DNA of 64,000 nucleotides, taken from IMG/VR virus record IMGVR_UViG_3300031951_000003, positions 1-64,000 of that record; one strand, 5' to 3'. Each line of letters opens with the position of its first letter. The stretch's first letter is position 1. The notes beneath the pieces are model-generated. The model saw nothing but the letters and a program-made list of their open reading frames with translations, had not been told where the DNA came from and ran no database searches. This document shows, piece by piece, positions 1 to 61,639 of this stretch. The position numbers and the translations under genes were made by a program.

Positions 1-347
1 GTTCCAGAAGTTCCTGACGAACCACTTGAACCAGATGAGCCAGATGTTCCACTTGTTCCAGATGAGCCAGATGTTCCACTTGTTCCAGATGAACCTGAAC
101 TTCCAGATGAACCTGATGTTCCGCTTGTTCCAGATGTTCCATTAGTTCCAGAAGTTCCTGACGAACCACTTGAACCAGATGAGCCAGATGTTCCACTTGT
201 TCCAGATGAGCCAGATGTTCCACTTGTTCCAGATGAACCTGAACTTCCAGATGAACCTGATGTTCCGCTTGTTCCAGATGTTCCATTAGTTCCAGAAGTT
301 CCTGACGAACCACTTGAACCAGATGAGCCAGATGTTCCACTTGTCCC
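1..347. repeat. 144-bp tandem repeat (about 2.4 copies) inside the collagen-like gene
   Basis: gttccagaagttcctgacgaacc starts at 1, 145 and 289. Confidence 0.85.
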
Positions 348-3300
348 TGATGAACCTGATGTTCCACTTGTTCCTGATGAACCACTTGAACCTGATGAAC
401 CTGATGTTCCAGATGTTCCATTTGTTCCAGATGTTCCGCTTGAGCCTGAACTTCCCGAAGAACCTGATGTTCCGCTTGTTCCAGAAGAGCCCGATGTTCC
501 ACTTGTTCCTGATGAACCACTCGAACCTGAAGAACCTGATGTTCCGCTTGTTCCTGATGTTCCGTCAGTTCCACTTGAACCTGAACTACCTGAAGAACCC
601 GAAGTTCCGCTTGTCCCTGAACTACCTGAAGAACCTGAAGTTCCGCTAGTTCCACTCGAACCTGAACTTCCCGAAGAACCTGAAGTTCCGCTAGTTCCAG
701 ATGTTCCGTTTGTTCCAGATGTTCCGCTTGAACCTGAACTTCCACTTGAACCAGATGTTCCACTTGTTCCCGATGAACCCGATGTTCCAGACGTTCCAGA
801 AGAACCTGAGCTTCCTGAAGAACCTGAAGTTCCGCTAGTTCCAGATGTTCCGTTTGTTCCACTTGTTCCAGAAGAGCCTGAGGAACCACTTGAGCCTGAG
901 GTTCCAGATGAACCTGATGTTCCGCTTGTTCCAGAAGAGCCAGATGAACCACTTGAACCAGATGTTCCACTTGTTCCAGATGTTCCGTTCGTTCCAGATG
1001 TTCCTGATGAACCACTTGAACCGCTTGAACCAGATGTTCCACTAGTACCAGAGGAGCCTGATGTTCCACTTGTGCCCGATGAACCTGAACTACCAGAAGA
1101 ACCTGATGTTCCGCTAGTTCCAGATGTACCATTTGTGCCAGATGTTCCGCTCGAACCTGAGCTACCCGAAGAACCTGATGTCCCTGAAGAACCTGAAGTT
1201 CCACTTGTTCCCGATGAACCAGATGAGCCACTAGAGCCAGATGTTCCGCTTGTTCCCGATGTTCCGTTTGTTCCAGAAGTCCCAGATGAACCACTTGAAC
1301 CTGAAGAACCTGAAGTTCCGCTCGTTCCCGAAGAACCTGAAGAACCTGATGTTCCGCTAGTTCCAGATGAACCACTTGAACCTGAAGAACCTGAAGTTCC
1401 GCTAGTTCCAGAAGTTCCATTTGTTCCAGATGTTCCTGAAGAACCTGAACTTCCACTCGAACCAGATGTTCCTGATGTTCCAGATGAACCAGATGTTCCA
1501 CTTGTGCCTGATGAACCTGAGCTACCCGAAGAACCTGAAGTTCCACTTGTTCCTGATGTCCCAGAAGTTCCATTTGTTCCAGAGGTTCCTGATGAACCTG
1601 AGCTACCACTTGAACCTGATGTCCCTGAAGAGCCAGATGTTCCGCTTGTTCCTGATGAACCACTTGAACCTGACGAACCTGATGTTCCACTTGTTCCCGA
1701 TGTTCCGTTTGTTCCTGAGGTCCCTGATGAACCGCTTGAACCAGATGAGCCTGATGTTCCACTTGTTCCAGAAGAACCTGATGTTCCACTTGTTCCAGAA
1801 GAACCTGAAGAACCGCTTGAACCTGATGTCCCTGAAGAGCCAGATGTTCCACTTGTTCCGGAAGAACCTGAAGAACCACTCGAGCCTGAAGTTCCGGAAG
1901 AACCTGATGTTCCAGAAGAACCTGAAGTTCCAGATGAACCTGAAGTTCCAGATGAACCGTTTCCACCTGTTGCACCATCCAAATTGGTTGTCCAACTATT
2001 GAATGTTCCTGTTCCGTTTATTTCCAACACATATAATGTCAATGCTCCTGTCGAAGAATCATAACTTACAACATCTCCATGGAAGTGATTTGCTAATGAA
2101 TTAGAAACAATAAGATGTTGTGCAATTGTATATGATAAACCAGTGCTTGTTGTTAAAGAAGTATTAGCACTTAACGTTAGTGTTGATAAATCAATTGATG
2201 TTGTTGAAGTTCCACTGTATTGTGCACTAATTCCTGATGTTCCAGATGTTCCGTTCGTTCCAGATGTTCCTGATGAGCCACTCGAACCAGATGAACCCGA
2301 TGTTCCGCTAGTTCCTGATGAACCAGATGTTCCGCTAGTTCCAGATGAACCTGAACTTCCTGATGAACCTGAAGTTCCACTCGTCCCAGATGTTCCATCT
2401 GTTCCAGATGTTCCTGAAGAACCACTCGAACCTGATGAACCTGAAGTTCCACTTGTTCCTGAACTACCTGAAGAACCTGAAGTTCCACTTGTCCCTGAAG
2501 AACCAGATGAACCACTTGAACCTGAAGTCCCACTAGTTCCTGATGTTCCATTTGTTCCAGATGTCCCACTCGAGCCTGAACTTCCGCTTGAACCCGATGT
2601 TCCTGAAGAGCCAGATGTTCCGCTAGTCCCAGATGAACCTGAACTTCCCGAAGAACCTGATGTTCCACTTGTTCCAGATGTCCCATCTGTTCCAGATGTT
2701 CCTGATGAACCTGAGCTACCCGAAGAACCAGATGTTCCTGATGAACCAGATGTTCCACTTGTCCCTGATGAACCAGATGAACCGCTCGAACCTGAAGTTC
2801 CGCTTGTTCCTGATGTTCCATCAGTTCCACTTATTCCTGAAGAACCACTTGTTCCCGAACTTCCTGATGAACCATCAAGGCCATTTAATAAAATCCAACC
2901 ACTAAGTGAAGATGGTTCATTTGTATTATTATTTATAGTTGATTGGTATGAAAATAAACCATCTATAACCATATCGCCATCCATATAAGTTGTTCCCGAT
3001 ACATAAGCTCCTTTGAATGGAGATGTTCCTGATGAACCTGAAGTTCCAGATGAGCCACTTGTTCCTGATGTTCCGTTTACTCCACTTAATCCACTAGAAC
3101 CACTCGAGCCTGATGTCCCATCAGTCCCTGAAGAACCACTTGAACCTGATGTTCCGTCTATTCCACTAGTTCCAGAAGAACCTGATGTTCCACTTGAGCC
3201 TGAAGAACCTGAGCTACCAGATGAACCTGATGTTCCACTTGTGCCTGAAGAACCTGAGCTACCAGATGAACCTGATGTTCCACTTGTTCCTGAACTACCA

Positions 3301-5417
3301 TCTGTTCCACTTGAGCCTGAAGAACCTGAGCTACCAGATGAACCTGATGTTCCACTAGTTCCTGATGAACCACTTGAACCTGAGGTTCCGCTAGTTCCCG
3401 AAGTGCCGTCTGTCCCACTTGAGCCAGATGAACCTGAAGTTCCACTAGTTCCCGAAGTGCCGTCTGTCCCACTTGTTCCAGAAGAACCTGATGTTCCACT
3501 TGTGCCTGAAGAACCACTTGAACCTGATGTTCCGTCTATTCCACTAGTTCCAGAAGAACCTGATGTTCCACTTGAGCCTGAAGAACCTGAGCTACCAGAT
3601 GAACCTGATGTTCCACTAGTTCCTGAAGAACCATCTGTTCCACTGGAACCAGATGAACCTGATGTTCCACTAGTTCCTGAAGAACCATCTGTTCCACTAG
3701 AACCAGATGAACCTGATGTTCCACTTGTGCCTGAAGAACCTGAGCTACCAGATGAACCCGATGTTCCACTAGTTCCTGAAGTTCCGTCCATTCCGCTAGT
3801 TCCTGAAGAACCACTTGAACCTGATGTTCCGCTAGTTCCCGAAGTGCCGTCTGTCCCACTTGAGCCAGATGAACCTGAAGTTCCACTAGTTCCCGAAGTG
3901 CCGTCTGTCCCACTTGTTCCAGAAGAACCTGATGTTCCACTTGTGCCTGAAGAACCACTTGAACCTGATGTCCCACTTGTTCCTGAAGTGCCGTCTATTC
4001 CGCTAGTTCCTGAACTACCGTCTGTTCCACTTGAGCCTGAAGAACCTGAGCTACCAGATGAACCTGATGTTCCACTAGTTCCTGAAGAACCATCTGTTCC
4101 ACTGGAACCAGATGAACCTGATGTTCCACTAGTTCCTGAAGAACCATCTGTTCCACTAGAACCAGATGAACCTGATGTTCCACTTGTGCCTGAAGAACCT
4201 GAGCTACCAGATGAACCCGATGTTCCACTAGTTCCTGAAGTTCCGTCCATTCCGCTAGTTCCTGAAGAACCACTTGAACCTGATGTTCCGCTAGTTCCTG
4301 AAGTTCCATCAATACCACTAGTTCCTGAAGTTCCATCAATACCACTAGTTCCTGAAGAACCTGATGTTCCATCGATACCACTTGTTCCAGAAGTTCCATC
4401 TAATCCGCTTGTTCCTGAAGTTCCATCAATACCACTAGTTCCTGAAGTTCCATCGATACCACTTGTTCCTGATGAACCTGATGTTCCATCGATACCACTT
4501 GTTCCTGATGAACCTGATGTTCCACTTGTTCCCGACGAACCACTTGAGCCTGAAGTTCCACTAATTCCTGAAGTTCCAGATGTTCCGTCTATTCCGCTAG
4601 TCCCAGATGTTCCGTCTATTCCGCTAGTCCCAGATGTTCCGTCTATTCCGCTAGTTCCTGATGTTCCATCTGTTCCACTGGAACCAGATGAACCTGATGT
4701 TCCACTAGTTCCTGAAGAACCATCTGTTCCACTAGAACCAGATGAACCTGAAGAACCTGATGTCCCATCAATTCCACTTGTTCCTGATGTCCCATCAATT
4801 CCACTAGTCCCTGATGTTCCGTCTAAACCGCTTGTTCCAGAAGAACCAGATGTTCCATCTAATCCACTTGTTCCTGATGTCCCATCAATTCCACTAGTTC
4901 CTGAGGTTCCATCAATTCCACTAGTTCCTGAGGTTCCATCTATGCCACTTGAACCAGACGTTCCGTCTACTCCACTTGTTCCTGAAGTGCCATCTATTCC
5001 AGATGTTCCACTCGAACCAGAAGTTCCGGATGTTCCGTCTAATCCGCTTGTTCCTGAAGTTCCATCAATTCCACTAGTTCCTGATGTTCCGTCTATTCCG
5101 CTAGTTCCAGAAGAGCCTGATGTTCCGTCTAAACCACTTGTTCCTGAAGTGCCATCTACCCCAGATGTTCCACTCGAACCAGAAGTTCCGTTGATACCAC
5201 TTGAGCCAGAAGTCCCGTCGATTCCTGATGAACCACTTGAACCAGATGTTCCACTAGTCCCTGATGTTCCTCCTGTTATACTTTCCGTCAAGGCTGAAAA
5301 CGTAATTTGCCCCGAAGTTCCTGATGTGCCTCCAGTATAGTCTGTAACTATATATAACCTATCGTCTGGGGCTGCCGATAGGACTATAGGTAAATCCGTT
5401 ATTCTTGTTGTTGCCAT
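1..5417 (-). CDS. Giant collagen-like (Gly-X-X, Ser/Thr-rich) fibre protein, >1805 aa, 3' end outside the window; absent from the ORF track
   Basis: ATG at 5417. Hand translation gives MATTRITDLPIVLSAAPDDRLYIVTDY... then GTS/GSS/GID/GLD/GTN triplets. The frame is the same at base 3-5 and stays open through the non-repeat inserts at about 2877-3020 and 1970-2230. Pro at every third residue of the + strand shadow ORFs implies Gly at every third codon on the - strand. TATTTAT lies 5 nt upstream of the ATG. Confidence 0.92.
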   Translation of the reverse strand, partial: MATTRITDLPIVLSAAPDDRLYIVTDYTGGTSGTSGQITFSALTESITGGTSGTSGTSGSSGSSGIDGTSGSSGINGTSGSSGTSGVDGTSGTSGLDGTSGSSGTSGIDGTSGTSGIDGTSGTSGLDGTSGTSGSSGTSGIDGTSGTSGVDGTSGSSGIDGTSGTSGIDGTSGTSGIDGTSGTSGLDGTSGSSGTSGLDGTSGTSGIDGTSGTSGIDGTSGSSGSSGSSGTDGSSGTSGTSGSSGSSGTDGTSGTSGIDGTSGTSGIDGTSGTSGIDGTSGTSGISGTSGSSGSSGTSGTSGSSGTSGIDGTSGSSGTSGIDGTSGTSGIDGTSGTSGLDGTSGTSGIDGTSGSSGTSGIDGTSGTSGIDGTSGTSGTSGSSGSSGTSGMDGTSGTSGTSGSSGSSGSSGTSGTSGSSGSSGTDGSSGTSGTSGSSGSSGTDGSSGTSGTSGSSGSSGSSGSSGTDGSSGTSGIDGTSGTSGTSGSSGSSGTSGTSGSSGTSGTDGTSGTSGTSGSSGSSGTDGTSGTSGTSGSSGSSGTSGMDGTSGTSGTSGSSGSSGSSGTSGTSGSSGSSGTDGSSGTSGTSGSSGSSGTDGSSGTSGTSGSSGSSGSSGSSGTSGSSGTSGIDGTSGSSGSSGTSGTSGSSGTSGTDGTSGTSGTSGSSGSSGTDGTSGTSGTSGSSGSSGTSGTSGSSGSSGSSGSSGTDGSSGTSGTSGSSGSSGSSGTSGTSGSSGSSGSSGSSGTSGSSGTSGIDGTSGSSGSSGTDGTSGSSGSSGLSGVNGTSGTSGSSGTSGSSGTSPFKGAYVSGTTYMDGDMVIDGLFSYQSTINNNTNEPSSLSGWILLNGLDGSSGSSGTSGSSGISGTDGTSGTSGTSGSSGSSGSSGTSGTSGSSGTSGSSGSSGSSGTSGTDGTSGTSGTSGSSGSSGSSGTSGTSGSSGTSGSSGSSGSSGTSGTNGTSGTSGTSGSSGSSGSSGTSGTSGSSGSSGTSGTSGSSGSSGSSGTSGTDGTSGTSGTSGSSGSSGSSGTSGTSGSSGTSGTSGSSGSSGSSGTSGTNGTSGTSGISAQYSGTSTTSIDLSTLTLSANTSLTTSTGLSYTIAQHLIVSNSLANHFHGDVVSYDSSTGALTLYVLEINGTGTFNSWTTNLDGATGGNGSSGTSGSSGTSGSSGTSGSSGTSGSSGSSGSSGTSGTSGSSGTSGSSGSSGSSGTSGTSGSSGTSGTSGSSGSSGSSGTSGTNGTSGTSGTSGSSGSSGSSGTSGTSGSSGTSGSSGSSGSSGTSGTNGTSGTSGTSGTSGSSGSSGSSGTSGTSGSSGTSGTSGSSGSSGSSGTSGTNGTSGTSGTSGSSGSSGSSGTSGTSGSSGSSGTSGTSGSSGSSGSSGTSGTNGTSGTSGTSGSSGSSGSSGTSGTSGSSGTSGSSGSSGSSGTSGTNGTSGTSGTSGSSGSSGSSGTSGTSGSSGTSGTSGSSGSSGSSGTSGTNGTSGTSGTSGSSGSSGSSGTSGTSGSSGTSGSSGSSGSSGTSGTNGTSGTSGTSGSSGSSGSSGTSGTSGSSGTSGTSGSSGSSGSSGTSGTNGTSGTSGTSGSSGSSGSSGTSGTSGSSGSSGTSGTSGSSGSSGSSGTDGTSGTSGTSGSSGSSGSSGTSGTSGSSGTSGTSGSSGSSGSSGTSGTNGTSGTSGSSGSSGSSGTSGTSGSSGTSGTSGSSGSSGSSGTSGTNGTSGTSGTSGSSGSSGSSGTSGTSGSSGTSGTSGSSGSSGSSGTSGTNGTSGTSGTSGSSGSSGSSGTSGTSGSSGTSGTSGSSGSSGSSGTSG
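3127..4298. repeat. Nested exact internal duplications in the collagen-like gene
   Basis: 3565-3839 = 4024-4298 (offset 459); 3385-3530 = 3826-3971 (offset 441); about 3127-3238 = 3505-3616 (offset 378). Confidence 0.8.
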
Positions 5418-55255: not shown

Positions 55256-55948
55256 TTAATTATTTTTAGTCATTGAACCCACAGTTTTAAGTGCATTCCA
55301 ATGAGAGTCTGACTTGGATGAACTCGCCCCAATCACAATCCCTTGTCCTCTCCCGACTGAGTTTCCAACAAAAACATTTGAAGCAGGAACTCCGTTGTTC
55401 ACAGCATTTCTTACATTATTTTTCGTTTCACTTCCAGCAGCATATGGCTCAATGATGAACAAGTTATTTTTATTTTGACCCAAGACATTTGAAATCTCAT
55501 TAGATTTCCTGCATCCCGCACTGAAAAGATAAATCGGGATTCCTGGGTTTTTATTGATAAAATCTATAATTGTAGAGGATGGTGTGTTAAACCTAAAACC
55601 TTTAACATTCTTTTCAGTTCCAATCCCCTGTTTCAATAAACTTACTTGTGAATCTATATTTAAGTCACCAGACCTATTATCTAACCCCCCAACTAAAATT
55701 GCATCATACTCACCAGATGTTTTTTGTGATGAGGAACCTTTTCTCACAATTTTCAAACCAAACTCTTGTTCCATCGCACCTCTTGTCAAAGGTCCTAACT
55801 TACCATCCACTCCATCTTTGTTTGGACCATACTTACCCAAATCATACCCCTTTTTTATCAGATACTTTTGTATGATTTCAACATTTGGGTCATAGGATAT
55901 TTGTTCTAATAAAAAACCCAATTGTGATTCTTTTAAAATAAATCTCAT
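55256..55948 (-). CDS. Peptidoglycan-binding domain protein with an alpha/beta-hydrolase-like C-terminal domain
   Basis: VEIIQKYLIKKGYDLG...GVDGKLGPLTRGAM (PG_binding_1). IYLFSAG candidate nucleophile elbow. Confidence 0.6.
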   Translation of the reverse strand: MRFILKESQLGFLLEQISYDPNVEIIQKYLIKKGYDLGKYGPNKDGVDGKLGPLTRGAMEQEFGLKIVRKGSSSQKTSGEYDAILVGGLDNRSGDLNIDSQVSLLKQGIGTEKNVKGFRFNTPSSTIIDFINKNPGIPIYLFSAGCRKSNEISNVLGQNKNNLFIIEPYAAGSETKNNVRNAVNNGVPASNVFVGNSVGRGQGIVIGASSSKSDSHWNALKTVGSMTKNN

Positions 55949-56524: not shown

Positions 56525-56920
56525 ATGGAAATTCAAAGAAATACAAAACTACAAGTAAGAAAAAGTTCAATTCACGGTTGGGGGGTTTTCGCATGTGAAG
56601 ACATAAACGAGGGTGAGGTTATTGAAGAGTGTCCGATTCTTAGATTACCTGTTCAAAGAGGAGAAACAAACTACACCTTAATTGACTATACATTTGTATT
56701 TCCAAAAGGAGAGAATTGGCAAAACCACGTTATTGCTCTTGGATATGGTTCACTATATAACCATTCCGAAAACTATAACGCAACATGGGAAGACGATTTG
56801 GACAAAGACATTTTAAGATTTAAAGCAACAAAACCAATTTCGAAAGATGAGGAAGTCACAACTTATTATGGTGATGAAAGTTATTGGTCTGACGGTAGAA
56901 GTCACATTGAAGTAAAATGA
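56525..56920 (+). CDS. SET-domain protein (putative protein lysine methyltransferase)
   Basis: SSIHGWGVFA...I.EGEVIEE, GSLYNHS..YN, ATKPISKDEEVTTYYG. Confidence 0.9.
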   Translation: MEIQRNTKLQVRKSSIHGWGVFACEDINEGEVIEECPILRLPVQRGETNYTLIDYTFVFPKGENWQNHVIALGYGSLYNHSENYNATWEDDLDKDILRFKATKPISKDEEVTTYYGDESYWSDGRSHIEVK

Positions 56921-58925: not shown

Positions 58926-58932
58926 TATTTAT
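58926..58932 (+). promoter_or_regulatory. TATTTAT upstream element
   Basis: 22 nt before the SOD ATG, on the + strand like the gene. Confidence 0.65.
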
Positions 58933-58954: not shown

Positions 58955-60493
58955 ATGAAAAAAATAGAAGAAAGAATTCAACAAATTGAAAAACAAATTA
59001 CCGAAAACCATATCGAAACAGAAAAACAATTGTTGATTACAGAAATGAAAAAAATTGGAATAGAAAAACTACCCTATTCTTATTCAGCCCTCAAAGGATT
59101 CATCGACGCAGAAACGATGAATTTCCACTACAACAAACACTATAAGGGATATGTAGATAAATTAAATGCCGCCCTGTCAAAGAAAAAACATGGAGATTTA
59201 GACTTAGAAAAAATTGTCAAAAACATTAGTCGATACGACCAAGTAGTAAGGAACAACGCTGGAGGAGCATTCAATCACGCACTTTTTTGGAATATGTTGT
59301 CTCCAACACCAAAAAAATTAACAGGGGAATTGTATAAAAAAATTACCAAAGAATACGGTAGTTTCAATCTATTCAAAAAGAAATTTGAAACTGTTGCAAA
59401 GGATAGATTTGGCTCAGGTTGGGTATGGTTAATTTTAACCTCAAAAAATACTTTGAAAATAATGTCGACACCAAATCAAGACAATCCACTTATGAATGTT
59501 ATCGAAGGTGGAGGTTTCCCTCTATTAGGTTTGGACCTTTGGGAACACGCCTACTATTTGAAATACAGAAATAAGAGAGACGAATACATTTCAAATTTTT
59601 GGAAGGTGGTCAATTGGGATTTTGTTCAGAAACTTTATGAAATGAAAGTTGAAACAAAACTACTAGAGTCGAACAAATTTCAAGGAATAATTACTGAATC
59701 AAAAGAACCACAATTCTGTAATCCAAAAGAAGTATTGTTCTATAGAGACTTGATTAATAATTACGCAATCAAAAAAAGATATCAGGAGGGAGTATCCTAC
59801 GTTCTAAAAAAAGTATTTTCACATTTTTGGGTTGAGGGTAATACTGAAGAGATGTCAGGATTTTATGGTGTAGAATCACCCGAGGGTAGGTCTATACTCA
59901 ATAACCTTAATACAAATTTCAATACATTTTGTTTATTGGTAAAAGCAGTAAACAAACAGATTGAATTAATTGGAAGGTCAGAAAAGAAGTTTGATTTTTC
60001 AAAAAAAGAAAAAAGAACTCTAAAGGAAACAACTAGATTTATTTCAGCATTGGACCACTTCAGAAACGAAATCTTTACAGAGAATAACGAAGACTTTATC
60101 AATATAATCAAAGTCCTTAAAAAACTTTGGGATAGGGGTCAAAAGTCTGAAGACAACGCAATTAAAAAAATAGAAGACTATTTTGATGGTAATGCTAAAA
60201 TTGAAAAGATTGGTTCACATGGTGGAAAACAAGACGCCTTCAAAGGTATTGATGTAAATGTGATTTTAGATGGAAAAAAGTTTTCTGCACAGGTTAAACC
60301 ATTCTCTAATGTTTCAATAATCGAGGACAGAGTTAAACTTTTGGATACAGGAAATGTTAAGCATTACGAAGTCGATTGGTATATTTTTATTAATCCTAAA
60401 ACAAATAAGATACTTATATTCAAAAACGACCCTATAAGTGATAAAAACCAATATGTCTTCAACGTTAGTTCACTACTACACGAAATAGAATAA
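58955..60493 (+). CDS. sod: Fe/Mn superoxide dismutase fused to a C-terminal PD-(D/E)xK-like domain
   Basis: SOD motifs LPYSYSAL, HYNKHYKGY, NAGGAFNH, RFGSGW, NQDNP, LDLWEHAYYLKY. C-terminal GQKSED / GIDV / AQVKP. Confidence 0.88.
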   Translation: MKKIEERIQQIEKQITENHIETEKQLLITEMKKIGIEKLPYSYSALKGFIDAETMNFHYNKHYKGYVDKLNAALSKKKHGDLDLEKIVKNISRYDQVVRNNAGGAFNHALFWNMLSPTPKKLTGELYKKITKEYGSFNLFKKKFETVAKDRFGSGWVWLILTSKNTLKIMSTPNQDNPLMNVIEGGGFPLLGLDLWEHAYYLKYRNKRDEYISNFWKVVNWDFVQKLYEMKVETKLLESNKFQGIITESKEPQFCNPKEVLFYRDLINNYAIKKRYQEGVSYVLKKVFSHFWVEGNTEEMSGFYGVESPEGRSILNNLNTNFNTFCLLVKAVNKQIELIGRSEKKFDFSKKEKRTLKETTRFISALDHFRNEIFTENNEDFINIIKVLKKLWDRGQKSEDNAIKKIEDYFDGNAKIEKIGSHGGKQDAFKGIDVNVILDGKKFSAQVKPFSNVSIIEDRVKLLDTGNVKHYEVDWYIFINPKTNKILIFKNDPISDKNQYVFNVSSLLHEIE

Positions 60494-60499
60494 TAAAGA

Positions 60500-60506
60500 T
60501 ATTTAT
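60500..60506 (+). promoter_or_regulatory. TATTTAT upstream element
   Basis: 5 nt before the gp13-like ATG, on the + strand like the gene. Confidence 0.65.
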
Positions 60507-60511
60507 TTGAT

Positions 60512-61639
60512 ATGGCAGCACTACCAGAACCAGAAAGAAGTAAAATTTATACAAGAGTCAAACACTTGTTGGGAGCACCCTTAAGAAGTGTAGAATTAGA
60601 AGACGAAATGATGGACTCGCTAATGGAATTATCTATTGGTGATTATGAAGAATATATTCTACAATGGCTAATCGATTCACAATGGGTTAACTTAGTAAAC
60701 CTCAATATGAATGAAAAGTCTGTTGCCAGAGCTTTGGTTACAAGGACAATGGACTTCGAACAACAATTTGCATATTCGTATTCTAAGATTGTTGGACTTC
60801 AGACCGTAGGACCATGGGTCTTGAAGAAAGATTATTTCATAATTGAAAAGAATGTTCAGACATACGAAATACCAGCCAACAGAGAAGTCAATGAACTTCT
60901 TTGGTTTAGTAATCAGGCTTGGACAGCATTCGGACTTGGAGGTCTTGGTGGATTTGGATTCGGTGGTATAGGTTTGGGTGCCAATGAAGCAGGATACGCT
61001 CAGATGGGATACCAAGGTTCTTATTTTATGATGTCTGGTTTTGATTACCTCATCAGAATGCAAGAAGCAAATATCTTGAATAGAATTCTCGGTGGTTCTA
61101 TGACATATAGGATTACCGCATTACCTGATGGTAAAAAGTTGATACACTTGATGAATACCCCTGGTGGTAAATTTAACTGGGCTAATTTCAACATGTATGC
61201 TGGTAAAGCGGTTTGGTATTGGTATTATGATGTAACACCAGACAGTAGAGCTGATTGTCTTAAAAACAATCCTGACATTATCAAACTACCGACTGACGTT
61301 CCTCTTGAATCCTTGAGTTGGGAAGATATCAATGTTCCTGGACAACAATGGATAAGAAGATGGTTTACAGCATATTGTAAAGAAACCTTAGCAAGAGTGA
61401 GAGGTAAATACAGTGGGAATCTTAAGACACCTGATTCTGAAATTACAATGGATTACACCAGTCTTTTAACTGAAGCCAAGGATGAAAAATCTAAACTGAT
61501 GGAAGAATTGACGGGCGCTGAAGGATGGCTTACAAGACTAAGACCTGAAAAGGTTATGGAAAGAGAAGCACAAATTGCTGAAAATTTAAATAAACAAATG
61601 AAATTCAGAGCAATGCCTCGTCAAATCTACGTAATCTAA
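60512..61639 (+). CDS. Neck protein, T4 gp13-like (head-tail adaptor)
   Basis: RVKHLLGAPLRSVELEDE, WIRRWFTAYCKETLARVRGKY, AKDEKSKL. Confidence 0.78.
   Translation: MAALPEPERSKIYTRVKHLLGAPLRSVELEDEMMDSLMELSIGDYEEYILQWLIDSQWVNLVNLNMNEKSVARALVTRTMDFEQQFAYSYSKIVGLQTVGPWVLKKDYFIIEKNVQTYEIPANREVNELLWFSNQAWTAFGLGGLGGFGFGGIGLGANEAGYAQMGYQGSYFMMSGFDYLIRMQEANILNRILGGSMTYRITALPDGKKLIHLMNTPGGKFNWANFNMYAGKAVWYWYYDVTPDSRADCLKNNPDIIKLPTDVPLESLSWEDINVPGQQWIRRWFTAYCKETLARVRGKYSGNLKTPDSEITMDYTSLLTEAKDEKSKLMEELTGAEGWLTRLRPEKVMEREAQIAENLNKQMKFRAMPRQIYVI

What the first reader, a model, noticed from the sequence alone, without database searches (positions are those of the whole stretch)
58990..59705. Candidate prohead-protease sites bracket the SOD domain: a capsid-packaged polyprotein
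Seen: QITE/N and LITE/M occur in the N-terminal leader just before the SOD core. KLLE/S and IITE/S occur in the linker right after it (about 59660-59701). The gene has the TATTTAT element. Established: T4 gp21 cleaves internal head proteins after (I/L)-X-E. Inference: the protein is packaged in the head and cut into free SOD and free nuclease-like modules that are ejected with the DNA. Caveat: (I/L)xE is short and also occurs by chance (e.g. ILSE near the NrdJ N-terminus).
Basis: inference. Interest (0 to 1): 0.65.

Follow-up and report, generated by a model that had tools for sequence, protein, structure and literature searches.

The report
Phage SOD–nuclease fusion with protease sites
A freshwater jumbo phage encodes a superoxide dismutase fused to a nuclease-like domain, and conserved T4-type head-protease motifs sit exactly at the module boundaries, so it is probably a capsid-packaged cargo cut into two enzymes, though no protein data show this yet.

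Summary
Gene 58955-60493 (+) encodes 512 aa: a 30-aa leader, an Fe/Mn SOD (36-226), a short linker, then a 260-aa domain ending in a PD-(D/E)xK nuclease-like fold.

In this one sequence their number is not above chance (10 seen, 6.9±2.3 expected). Comparison makes them significant:
- E precedes the SOD core in 246/246 distinct leaders, with I/L at P3 in 242.
- An [ILVM]xE lies 5-14 aa before the nuclease-like domain in 227/248 distinct sequences (background 20%), mostly followed by S/G/A.

The window's contig is a 35% fragment. Complete 317-321 kb relatives with an identical SOD gene carry a T4 gp21-family protease in a T4-like head gene block. The capsid protein's INE|A aligns with T4 gp23's cleavage site.

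[IL]xE[SAG] is enriched 3.6-fold at N-termini across the proteome (T4 control 2.0-fold). TATTTAT is a genuine promoter-like element.

In related phages the same locus holds leader-SOD alone, leader-nuclease alone, or the fusion.

Packaging, cleavage and ejection remain inferred. Verdict: partly supported, a new variant of the T4 internal-protein scheme. Confidence about 0.5.

The parts
58926..58932 (+). TATTTAT promoter-like element, 29 nt upstream of the start codon
   Evidence: Read directly. The heptamer occurs upstream (60 nt) of 108 of 398 ORFs in the complete relative against 6.5 expected.
58955..60493 (+). Whole gene: 512-aa leader-SOD-linker-nuclease-like fusion protein (P0001)
   Evidence: ORF and translation. 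More than 117 full-length homologues at 66-98% identity; further clades at about 50% and about 30% identity.
58955..59044 (+). N-terminal leader, residues 1-30, predicted helical; candidate sites I15-T-E17 (58997-59005) and I28-T-E30 (59036-59044), then M31-K-K-I-G
   Evidence: Leader is exactly 30 aa in 193 of 246 unique sequences. E at -1 is invariant (4.32 bits) and I/L at -3 scores 3.2 bits; other positions score about 1.3-2.6 bits. Helix prediction has low confidence.
59060..59632 (+). Fe/Mn superoxide dismutase domain, residues 36-226
   Evidence: Pfam Sod_Fe_N E=1e-22 and Sod_Fe_C E=1.4e-39, both above the curated cut-offs. H108, D194, E197 and H198 are invariant in 117 homologues.
59645..59701 (+). 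Linker, residues 231-249, with candidate sites L236-L-E238|S239 (59660-59668) and I246-T-E248|S249 (59690-59698)
   Evidence: In 117 homologues L236, E238, S239, [IL]246, E248 and S249 are kept while 237, 240-244, 247 and 250-253 vary. The motif persists in distant fusions and in stand-alone forms.
59702..60127 (+). Helical N-terminal half of the C-terminal module, residues 250-391; no known family
   Evidence: AlphaFold model m815c7ad9e359, pLDDT 94. No Pfam or PHROG match and no clear structural match. It occurs without the nuclease core in a 394-aa family.
60128..60490 (+). PD-(D/E)xK nuclease-like core, residues 392-512, with invariant E399, D427, D433, Q446, K448 and Y471
   Evidence: VIA-align: Hjc Z 8.3, I-Ssp6803I Z 7.5, NhoI Z 7.5. 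Foldseek top hits I-Ssp6803I, Hjc, SPARDA nuclease and restriction enzymes. Invariant columns.
60500..60506 (+). Second TATTTAT element, 12 nt before the next gene
60512..61639 (+). Downstream neighbour: T4 gp13-like neck / head-tail adaptor protein, a virion gene on the same strand
   Evidence: phrog_211 head-tail adaptor Ad2, E=1.1e-9. The orthologue in L098 carries Pfam Phage_T4_gp13.

Best explanation
The gene encodes a late-expressed cargo protein of the phage head.
1. An N-terminal 30-aa helical leader brings the protein into the prohead core. This role is like the capsid targeting sequence of T4 internal proteins (inferred).
2. The phage's T4 gp21-type serine protease then cuts after Glu in [I/L]-x-E: after E30 (and perhaps E17), removing the leader, and after E238 and/or E248 in the linker (inferred).
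3. The result is a free Fe/Mn superoxide dismutase starting at about M31 and a free protein of about 265 aa whose C-terminal half has a PD-(D/E)xK nuclease fold.
4. Both would stay in the DNA-filled head and enter the host with the DNA (inferred, the least certain step).

Shown here: the domain architecture, the conservation and placement of the motifs, the protease gene and T4-like head module in complete genomes of the same phage, the T4-like site in the capsid protein, the proteome-wide N-terminal tag, and the modular gene history.
For: 1. Protease. Peptidase_S77 at G001:107549-107980, E=1.5e-22, above the cut-off, in three complete relatives; two of them carry a 100% identical SOD gene. 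It matches phrog_207 head maturation protease at E=6e-43. It is 32% identical to T4 gp21, including the ELNHP and SSRG blocks.
2. Gene order. Portal (assigned by position only, not family-tested), small proteins, protease, acidic scaffold-like protein and MCP follow T4's 20-67-68-21-22-23 order.
3. Site rule. BLASTP aligns the MCP's INE59|A60 with T4 gp23's LTE65|A66. T4 gp21 cuts after L/I-X-E (PMC9026906).
4. Boundary motifs. SOD boundary: E 246/246, I/L 242/246, variable P2; P1' is A or G in the 9 leaders that lack Met. C-domain boundary: 227/248 against 20.5% background, with P1' S/G/A in 80%.
5. Proteome-wide tag. [IL]xE[SAG] is 3.6-fold enriched in the first 15 residues. Control motifs with D/K/Q/N/R at P1 or V/F/M/A/G/K/R at P3 give 0.5-1.2-fold. 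The same statistic in T4 is 2.0-fold and recovers ipII, ipIII, gp22 and gp24. Tags persist in orthologues of a relative whose proteome is 64% identical: 17/25, against 10/250 among untagged proteins.
6. Tag and promoter. Tagged genes associate with TATTTAT (odds ratio 6.6, P=1.6e-7). That element precedes head, tail and baseplate genes but lies within 45 nt of none of the 7 recognised replication genes.
7. Modularity. The slot between the SNF2 helicase and the gp13-like neck gene holds leader-SOD only, leader-nuclease only or the fusion. The SOD-leader HMM hits the N-termini of stand-alone nuclease-like proteins (20.1, 9.6 and 7.3 bits) against at most 5.9 bits in 397 other N-termini. One stand-alone form begins MKYIITE|G, the same short tag seen on other phage proteins and inside this linker.
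Against: - There is no protein-level evidence at all: no virion proteome, and no cultured relative carries the fusion.
- The motif count in this single protein is not above chance (P=0.13).
- The leader is I/L/E/K-rich and probably a coiled coil, where [IL]xE arises easily.
- P1' at the SOD boundary is Met in 237/246 leaders, which also fits an ancestral or internal start codon.
- The leader shows no significant similarity to other proteins of the phage (best E 0.19) or to the T4 CTS.
- A nuclease stored next to the genome needs a safeguard that is not identified.
- The catalytic triad has Q where D/E is usual.
- The protease gene is not on the window's own contig.
- The conservation counts come from related sequences.
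Confidence: 0.5

Rival explanations
1. Uncleaved cytoplasmic bifunctional enzyme. The fusion works as one polypeptide in the infected cell, for example an antioxidant auxiliary gene coupled to a DNA enzyme. The leader is a coiled coil for oligomerisation, and the conserved [IL]xE residues are structural features of helices and linker.
For: The motif count is not above chance in the single sequence. The leader is predicted helical and heptad-like. Phage SODs are usually read as auxiliary metabolic genes (PMC12542629). No protein data exist.
Against: - A structural role does not explain absolute invariance of E at -1 with a freely varying P2.
- It does not explain the S/G/A preference after E at the second boundary.
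- It does not explain reuse of the same short tag at the N-termini of dozens of unrelated late genes, specific to [IL]xE.
- It does not explain the free recombination of leader, SOD and nuclease modules.
Confidence: 0.2
2. Packaged, but only the leader is removed. The protease trims the N-terminal propeptide as in T4 internal proteins, while the SOD-nuclease stays fused in the head. The linker motifs are relics of the N-terminal tag of a once separate gene.
For: The linker tag matches the N-terminal tags of stand-alone genes, so it could be inherited. T4 substrates with enzymatic roles are mostly cut only near the N-terminus (PMC9026906).
Against: A relic would decay. Instead, two linker sites with S at P1' are kept across 66-98% identical homologues while neighbouring linker residues vary, and also in clades with about 30% identity.
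Confidence: 0.15
3. Separate products arise by internal translation starts at M31 and M230 rather than by proteolysis.
For: M31 follows the invariant E in 237/246 leaders. M230 is present in 110/117 close homologues. T4 uses internal starts in genes 17 and 21 (annotation).
Against: P1' is A or G in 9 unique leaders. M230 is L in 7 close homologues and absent in distant fusions such as P0130 and P0133. No TATTTAT element lies inside the gene ahead of either Met. This does not explain the [IL]xE conservation.
Confidence: 0.06

Closest known systems
T4 internal proteins IPI/IPII/IPIII and Alt: capsid targeting sequence plus gp21 processing
   Same: A short N-terminal propeptide ends in [L/I]-x-E. 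A gp21-family protease is encoded in a 20-21-22-23-like head module. The capsid protein site aligns with T4 gp23 E65|A66. The cargo is diverse and fast-evolving while only the tag is conserved. Enzymes such as Alt are delivered with the DNA (PMC3012670).
   Different: The leader here is 30 aa and coiled-coil-like, not the 10-aa T4 CTS, and shows no sequence similarity to it. The cargo is a two-enzyme fusion with candidate internal sites. Packaging is not demonstrated.
Processed head and inner-body proteins of giant phages phiKZ, 201phi2-1 and SPN3US
   Same: These are jumbo phages with a diverged gp21-like protease. Many head proteins are cut after Glu, and propeptides carry several redundant sites (PMC9026906).
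   Different: Those proteases use S/A/G-X-E. Here the motif is the T4-type I/L-X-E. The capsid protein is closest to those of far-T4 phages: Microcystis phage Mel-JY01, Flavobacterium phage immuto and Rhodothermus RM378.
Virion-packaged Cu,Zn superoxide dismutases of giant eukaryotic viruses (Megavirus chilensis and others)
   Same: A virus-encoded SOD is carried in the particle for use at the start of infection (review PMC9405923).
   Different: They are an unrelated enzyme family (Cu,Zn rather than Fe/Mn) in eukaryotic viruses, with no protease-tag mechanism. I found no phage precedent.
Hjc / I-Ssp6803I / type II restriction endonucleases (PD-(D/E)xK fold)
   Same: The core alpha-beta-beta-beta topology is shared. 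An acidic residue sits at the start of strand 2 (D433), xK lies in strand 3 (K448), and a helix Glu is present (E399).
   Different: Q446 replaces the usual D/E. An extra 140-aa helical domain precedes the core. There is no sequence-family membership. Z scores of 7.5-8.3 are moderate.

Membership tests
Substrate of a T4 gp21-type prohead protease (CTS-bearing head cargo) | The phage encodes a gp21-family (Peptidase_S77) protease | tested here: met
   Found in three complete relatives, two with a 100% identical SOD gene. Not on the window's own contig, which ends about 2 kb before it.
Substrate of a T4 gp21-type prohead protease (CTS-bearing head cargo) | This phage's protease uses the L/I-X-E rule | tested here: inconclusive
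   Indirect only. The MCP's INE|A aligns with the T4 gp23 site. Scaffold-like and core-like proteins are rich in [IL]xE. N-terminal enrichment is specific to [IL]xE. No cleavage data exist.
Substrate of a T4 gp21-type prohead protease (CTS-bearing head cargo) | L/I-X-E motifs lie in exposed N-terminal or inter-domain segments and are conserved in homologues | tested here: met
Substrate of a T4 gp21-type prohead protease (CTS-bearing head cargo) | The protein is physically present in the capsid and its termini match the predicted cuts | not testable with these tools
   Uncultured phage; no proteome available.
Substrate of a T4 gp21-type prohead protease (CTS-bearing head cargo) | The N-terminal leader is sufficient for capsid targeting | not testable with these tools
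   Only a hint: the leader is portable between SOD and nuclease modules. It shows no significant similarity to the scaffold or to other proteins.
Fe/Mn superoxide dismutase | Both Pfam domains score above the gathering thresholds | tested here: met
   Sod_Fe_N 80.8 bits (cut-off 27); Sod_Fe_C 134.7 bits (cut-off 20.9).
Fe/Mn superoxide dismutase | Metal ligands (3 His, 1 Asp) and the D-x-W-E-H signature are present | tested here: met
   H108, D194, E197 and H198 are invariant in 117 homologues. H58 is present in the FHYNKH segment of the window's protein. The assignment of ligand positions rests on my knowledge of the family.
PD-(D/E)xK nuclease superfamily | Restriction-endonuclease-like alpha/beta core fold | tested here: met
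   Model pLDDT 94. Nearly all top hits are PD-(D/E)xK enzymes: Z 8.3/7.5/7.5, and Foldseek probability 1.00 for I-Ssp6803I.
PD-(D/E)xK nuclease superfamily | Catalytic D...(D/E)-x-K motif | tested here: inconclusive
   D433 and K448 are invariant and in the expected strands, but the middle residue is an invariant Q446.
PD-(D/E)xK nuclease superfamily | Membership of a described sequence family | tested here: not met
   No Pfam or PHROG hit. The profile search against PDB sequences gave nothing meaningful.

The most novel reading that the evidence does not exclude
This abundant lineage of about 320-kb freshwater phages uses a general [I/L]-x-E N-terminal tag to load dozens of unrelated proteins into the head. 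One of them is a polyprotein that the prohead protease splits into an Fe/Mn superoxide dismutase and a PD-(D/E)xK nuclease, both delivered into the host with the DNA. That would be the first antioxidant enzyme known to be carried and injected by a bacteriophage particle.
Probability: 0.35. Interest if true: 0.75.

Novelty: new variant of a known kind. Interest (0 to 1): 0.6.

Why it matters
If true, it extends the T4 internal-protein paradigm (tag, package, cleave, inject) to an uncultured, widespread group of freshwater jumbo phages, and to a new kind of cargo.

Phage SODs are normally read as auxiliary metabolic genes expressed during infection. A pre-packaged SOD would instead act in the first seconds of infection or inside the particle.

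A co-packaged nuclease suggests attack on host or competitor DNA.

The conserved tag would also give a sequence-only way to predict the head cargo of such phages. It is also a natural example of modular cargo fusions that could guide protein-delivery engineering of the T4 type.

Tried and rejected
- Motif count as evidence: rejected. 10 observed against 6.9±2.3 expected.
- Protease on the window's own contig: Peptidase_S77 and S78 were both absent. The contig is a 35% fragment, and the protease was found in complete relatives instead.
- Leader or linker HMMs against the phage proteome: no significant hit. The weak linker hits clustering at N-termini did lead to the tag analysis.
- Single-sequence AlphaFold of the whole protein: unusable, pLDDT 35.
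- P0122 as a 'stand-alone' nuclease-like protein starting at the linker Met: rejected as an artefact of a 1.3-kb contig that begins inside the fusion gene. Genuine stand-alone forms were confirmed by context instead.
- Pfam, PHROG and PDB-sequence searches of the C-terminal module: nothing.
- Pfam scan of ten tagged proteins: only a weak PG_binding_1 hit.
- T4 gp55-like late sigma factor: one weak match (E 0.002) and no PHROG support. The 'late' class of TATTTAT therefore rests on which genes it precedes.
- Literature: no report of a phage virion-associated SOD.
- Not used: the look-up of sequencing runs, read laying and complex prediction. They cannot show proteolysis or packaging.

Full report
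**What is there.**
Window 58955-60493 (+) is one open frame of 512 aa. Pfam places an Fe/Mn superoxide dismutase at residues 36-226: Sod_Fe_N E=1e-22 and Sod_Fe_C E=1.4e-39, both above the curated cut-offs. Ligand-type residues H108, D194 and H198 are invariant in 117 homologues.

Residues 1-30 form a leader that normal SODs lack. Residues 231-249 form a linker. Residues 250-512 match no Pfam or PHROG family.

An AlphaFold model of residues 240-512, built on 66 diverse homologues, is confident (pLDDT 94). Its last 120 residues match PD-(D/E)xK nucleases:
- Hjc, Z 8.3
- I-Ssp6803I, Z 7.5
- NhoI, Z 7.5
- Foldseek's top hits are the same kinds of enzyme.

The invariant residues E399, D433, Q446-x-K448 and Y471 sit where the catalytic residues of that fold sit, with Q in place of the usual acidic residue. 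'Nuclease-like' is therefore justified at fold level. Activity is not shown.

**The observation.**
Taken alone they are not evidence. The protein has 10 [IL]xE against 6.9±2.3 in shuffles (P=0.13), and the leader and linker are rich in I, L and E.

**The genome.**
The window's contig is an IMG/VR fragment of 105.6 kb, estimated 35% complete. It contains no Peptidase_S77 or S78.

The same SOD gene, 100% identical, lies in complete records of 317-321 kb, one with terminal repeats. The overlap with the window's contig is identical over 15 kb, and window coordinates equal those of record G001.

All three complete relatives searched have a Peptidase_S77 match (E about 1e-22, above the cut-off). This protein also matches phrog_207, head maturation protease (E=6e-43). 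It is 32% identical to T4 gp21 across the blocks holding ELNHP and SSRG. It lies about 2 kb beyond the end of the window's contig.

The surrounding genes, in order, are:
1. a 612-aa protein in the position of T4 gene 20, which I take to be the portal from gene order only (it was not family-tested)
2. a 232-aa protein with 12 [IL]xE
3. the protease
4. a 525-aa very acidic scaffold-like protein
5. a 603-aa capsid protein (phrog_138).

This is the T4 order 20-67-68-21-22-23.

BLASTP aligns the capsid protein's INE59|A60 with T4 gp23's LTE65|A66. From my knowledge of T4, that is the gp23 maturation cut, the one that removes the first 65 residues. T4 gp21 cuts after L/I-X-E (PMC9026906).

By capsid protein the phage is a far-T4 myovirus. 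The nearest cultured relatives are Microcystis phage Mel-JY01, Flavobacterium phage immuto and Rhodothermus RM378, at 37-43% identity.

**Conservation of the boundary motifs.**
I collected full-length fusions at 66-98% identity, a second clade, SOD-first proteins of other lengths, and C-domain relatives from an exhaustive search.

At the SOD boundary, 246 distinct leaders all have E immediately before the SOD core. Of these, 242 have I or L two residues earlier. The residue in between takes 13 identities. The residue after E is M in 237, A in 8 and G in 1. E(-1) and I/L(-3) are the most conserved positions of the leader.

At the boundary of the nuclease-like module, 227 of 248 distinct upstream segments carry [ILVM]xE ending 5-14 residues before the domain (mode 8-9). 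Random windows of the same proteins do so in 20.5% of cases. The next residue is S, G or A in 80%.

In the close family the linker keeps L236, E238, S239, [IL]246, E248 and S249, while residues 237, 240-244, 247 and 250-253 drift. Fusions with only about 30% identity in the C-domain still have the motifs at both boundaries.

These sequences share ancestry, so the counts are not independent. The pattern is nonetheless that of a gp21-type site: fixed P3 and P1, free P2, small P1'.

**A proteome-wide tag.**
In 398 ORFs of the complete relative, [IL]TES occurs 17 times, and 11 of those are within the first 15 residues. More than 20 proteins begin with a short tag of the form M-x-K-x-x-x-[IL]-x-E-[SA], followed by an amphipathic helix. 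They include the capsid protein, the protease and genes next to the capsid gene.

Enrichment of [IL]xE[SAG] at N-termini is 3.6-fold. The same test with D, K, Q, N or R at P1, or with V/F/M, A/G or K/R at P3, gives 0.5-1.2-fold.

As a positive control, T4 gives 2.0-fold by the same pipeline, and the list recovers ipII, ipIII, gp22 and gp24.

In a relative whose proteome is 64% identical (median), 17 of 25 tagged proteins keep the strict tag. Several of these are only 37-52% identical overall. Among untagged proteins, 10 of 250 orthologues are tagged.

The second linker site of the SOD fusion (G-I-I-T-E|S) is the same tag that starts other proteins of the phage (M-K-Y-I-I-T-E|S). It also starts one genuine stand-alone nuclease-like protein, M-K-Y-I-I-T-E|G, which has an in-frame stop upstream.

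**Promoter.**
TATTTAT precedes 108 of 398 ORFs within 60 nt, against 6.5 expected. It sits at two preferred distances from the ATG, 11-13 nt and 19-23 nt.

It stands before the portal-position, protease, scaffold-like, tail and baseplate genes, the SOD gene and the gp13-like neck gene. It lies within 45 nt of none of the seven recognised replication or nucleotide-metabolism genes.

Tagged genes carry it far more often than untagged ones (odds ratio 6.6, P=1.6e-7). Calling it 'late' is an inference. A T4 gp55-like sigma factor could not be confirmed.

**Gene history.**
The slot between the SNF2 helicase and the gp13-like neck gene is modular.
- One syntenic relative has only leader-SOD, 237 aa.
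- Others have only a leader-bearing nuclease-like protein, 290-292 aa. One of these has TATTTAT 23 nt upstream.
- The window has the fusion.

An HMM of SOD leaders scores the N-termini of stand-alone nuclease-like proteins at 20.1, 9.6 and 7.3 bits. The best score among 397 other N-termini of the phage is 5.9 bits. The leader therefore travels with whichever module comes first. That fits a targeting role better than a role in SOD catalysis.

One apparent stand-alone form (P0122) was an artefact of a truncated contig and was discarded.

**Interpretation.**
The protein is a head cargo of the T4 internal-protein type, processed by the gp21-like protease at the leader and in the linker to give separate SOD and nuclease-like proteins. 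I put this at about 0.5.

Packaging, cleavage and ejection are all inferred.

The main rivals are:
- an uncleaved cytoplasmic fusion whose motifs are structural (0.2)
- packaging with removal of the leader only (0.15)
- internal translation starts at M31 and M230 (0.06). This is weakened by A or G at P1' in nine leaders and by the loss of M230 in distant fusions.

**Comparison and novelty.**
The mechanism is that of the T4 CTS plus gp21 (PMC3012670; PMC9026906), and of the multi-site processing seen in phiKZ-like phages.

Three things differ here:
- the 30-aa leader
- the two-enzyme fusion with sites at the module boundary
- the cargo.

Virion-packaged SODs are known in giant eukaryotic viruses (PMC9405923). 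I found no phage case, and phage SODs are treated as auxiliary metabolic genes (PMC12542629). I rate it a new variant of a known kind.

Noticed in passing
G001 (complete relative) 196-217 kb cluster, plus 100272-100742 and 102702-103283 next to the capsid gene; in the window, 55256-55948 (-): More than 20 mostly unannotated genes start with the same short tag (M-x-K-x-x-x-[IL]-x-E-[SA]) followed by an amphipathic helix ending [IL]-K-E-Q. Most sit behind TATTTAT. The window's 230-aa protein with a weak PG_binding_1 match starts M-R-F-I-L-K-E-S. These are candidates for a large set of head-packaged proteins.
   Followed up: partly
Proteins P0451 and P0491 (relatives): Some relatives carry an extra 130-aa N-terminal domain with an HExxH-like motif fused in front of the leader-SOD. 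An [IL]-Y-E sits just before the retained leader Met. This is another polyprotein-like arrangement.
   Followed up: no
Proteins P0460, P0466 and about 20 others of 394 aa: This family has leader-SOD fused only to the helical first half of the C-terminal module (HMM positions 4-129 of 255), without the nuclease core. The helical half therefore seems to be an independent domain.
   Followed up: partly
Upstream regions across the genome; in the window 58926-58932 and 60500-60506: TATTTAT lies at two preferred distances from start codons, 11-13 nt and 19-23 nt. This implies very short or absent 5' leaders on many mRNAs.
   Followed up: partly
window 1-5417: Long ORFs are open in several frames on both strands (up to 1805 aa) over repetitive units of the CCAGATGA(A/G)CC type. 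The first 416 bases of the window's contig do not match the end of the complete relative.
   Followed up: no
G001:94048-94239 (+), outside the window: A weak match to the T4 late sigma factor gp55 (E 0.002, 27% identity over 64 aa) lies inside a 248-aa ORF with no PHROG hit. It is a possible late-transcription factor.
   Followed up: partly
window 56525-56920 (+): A 131-aa protein whose orthologue in a relative carries a Pfam SET domain. It lies just upstream of the SNF2 helicase gene.
   Followed up: no
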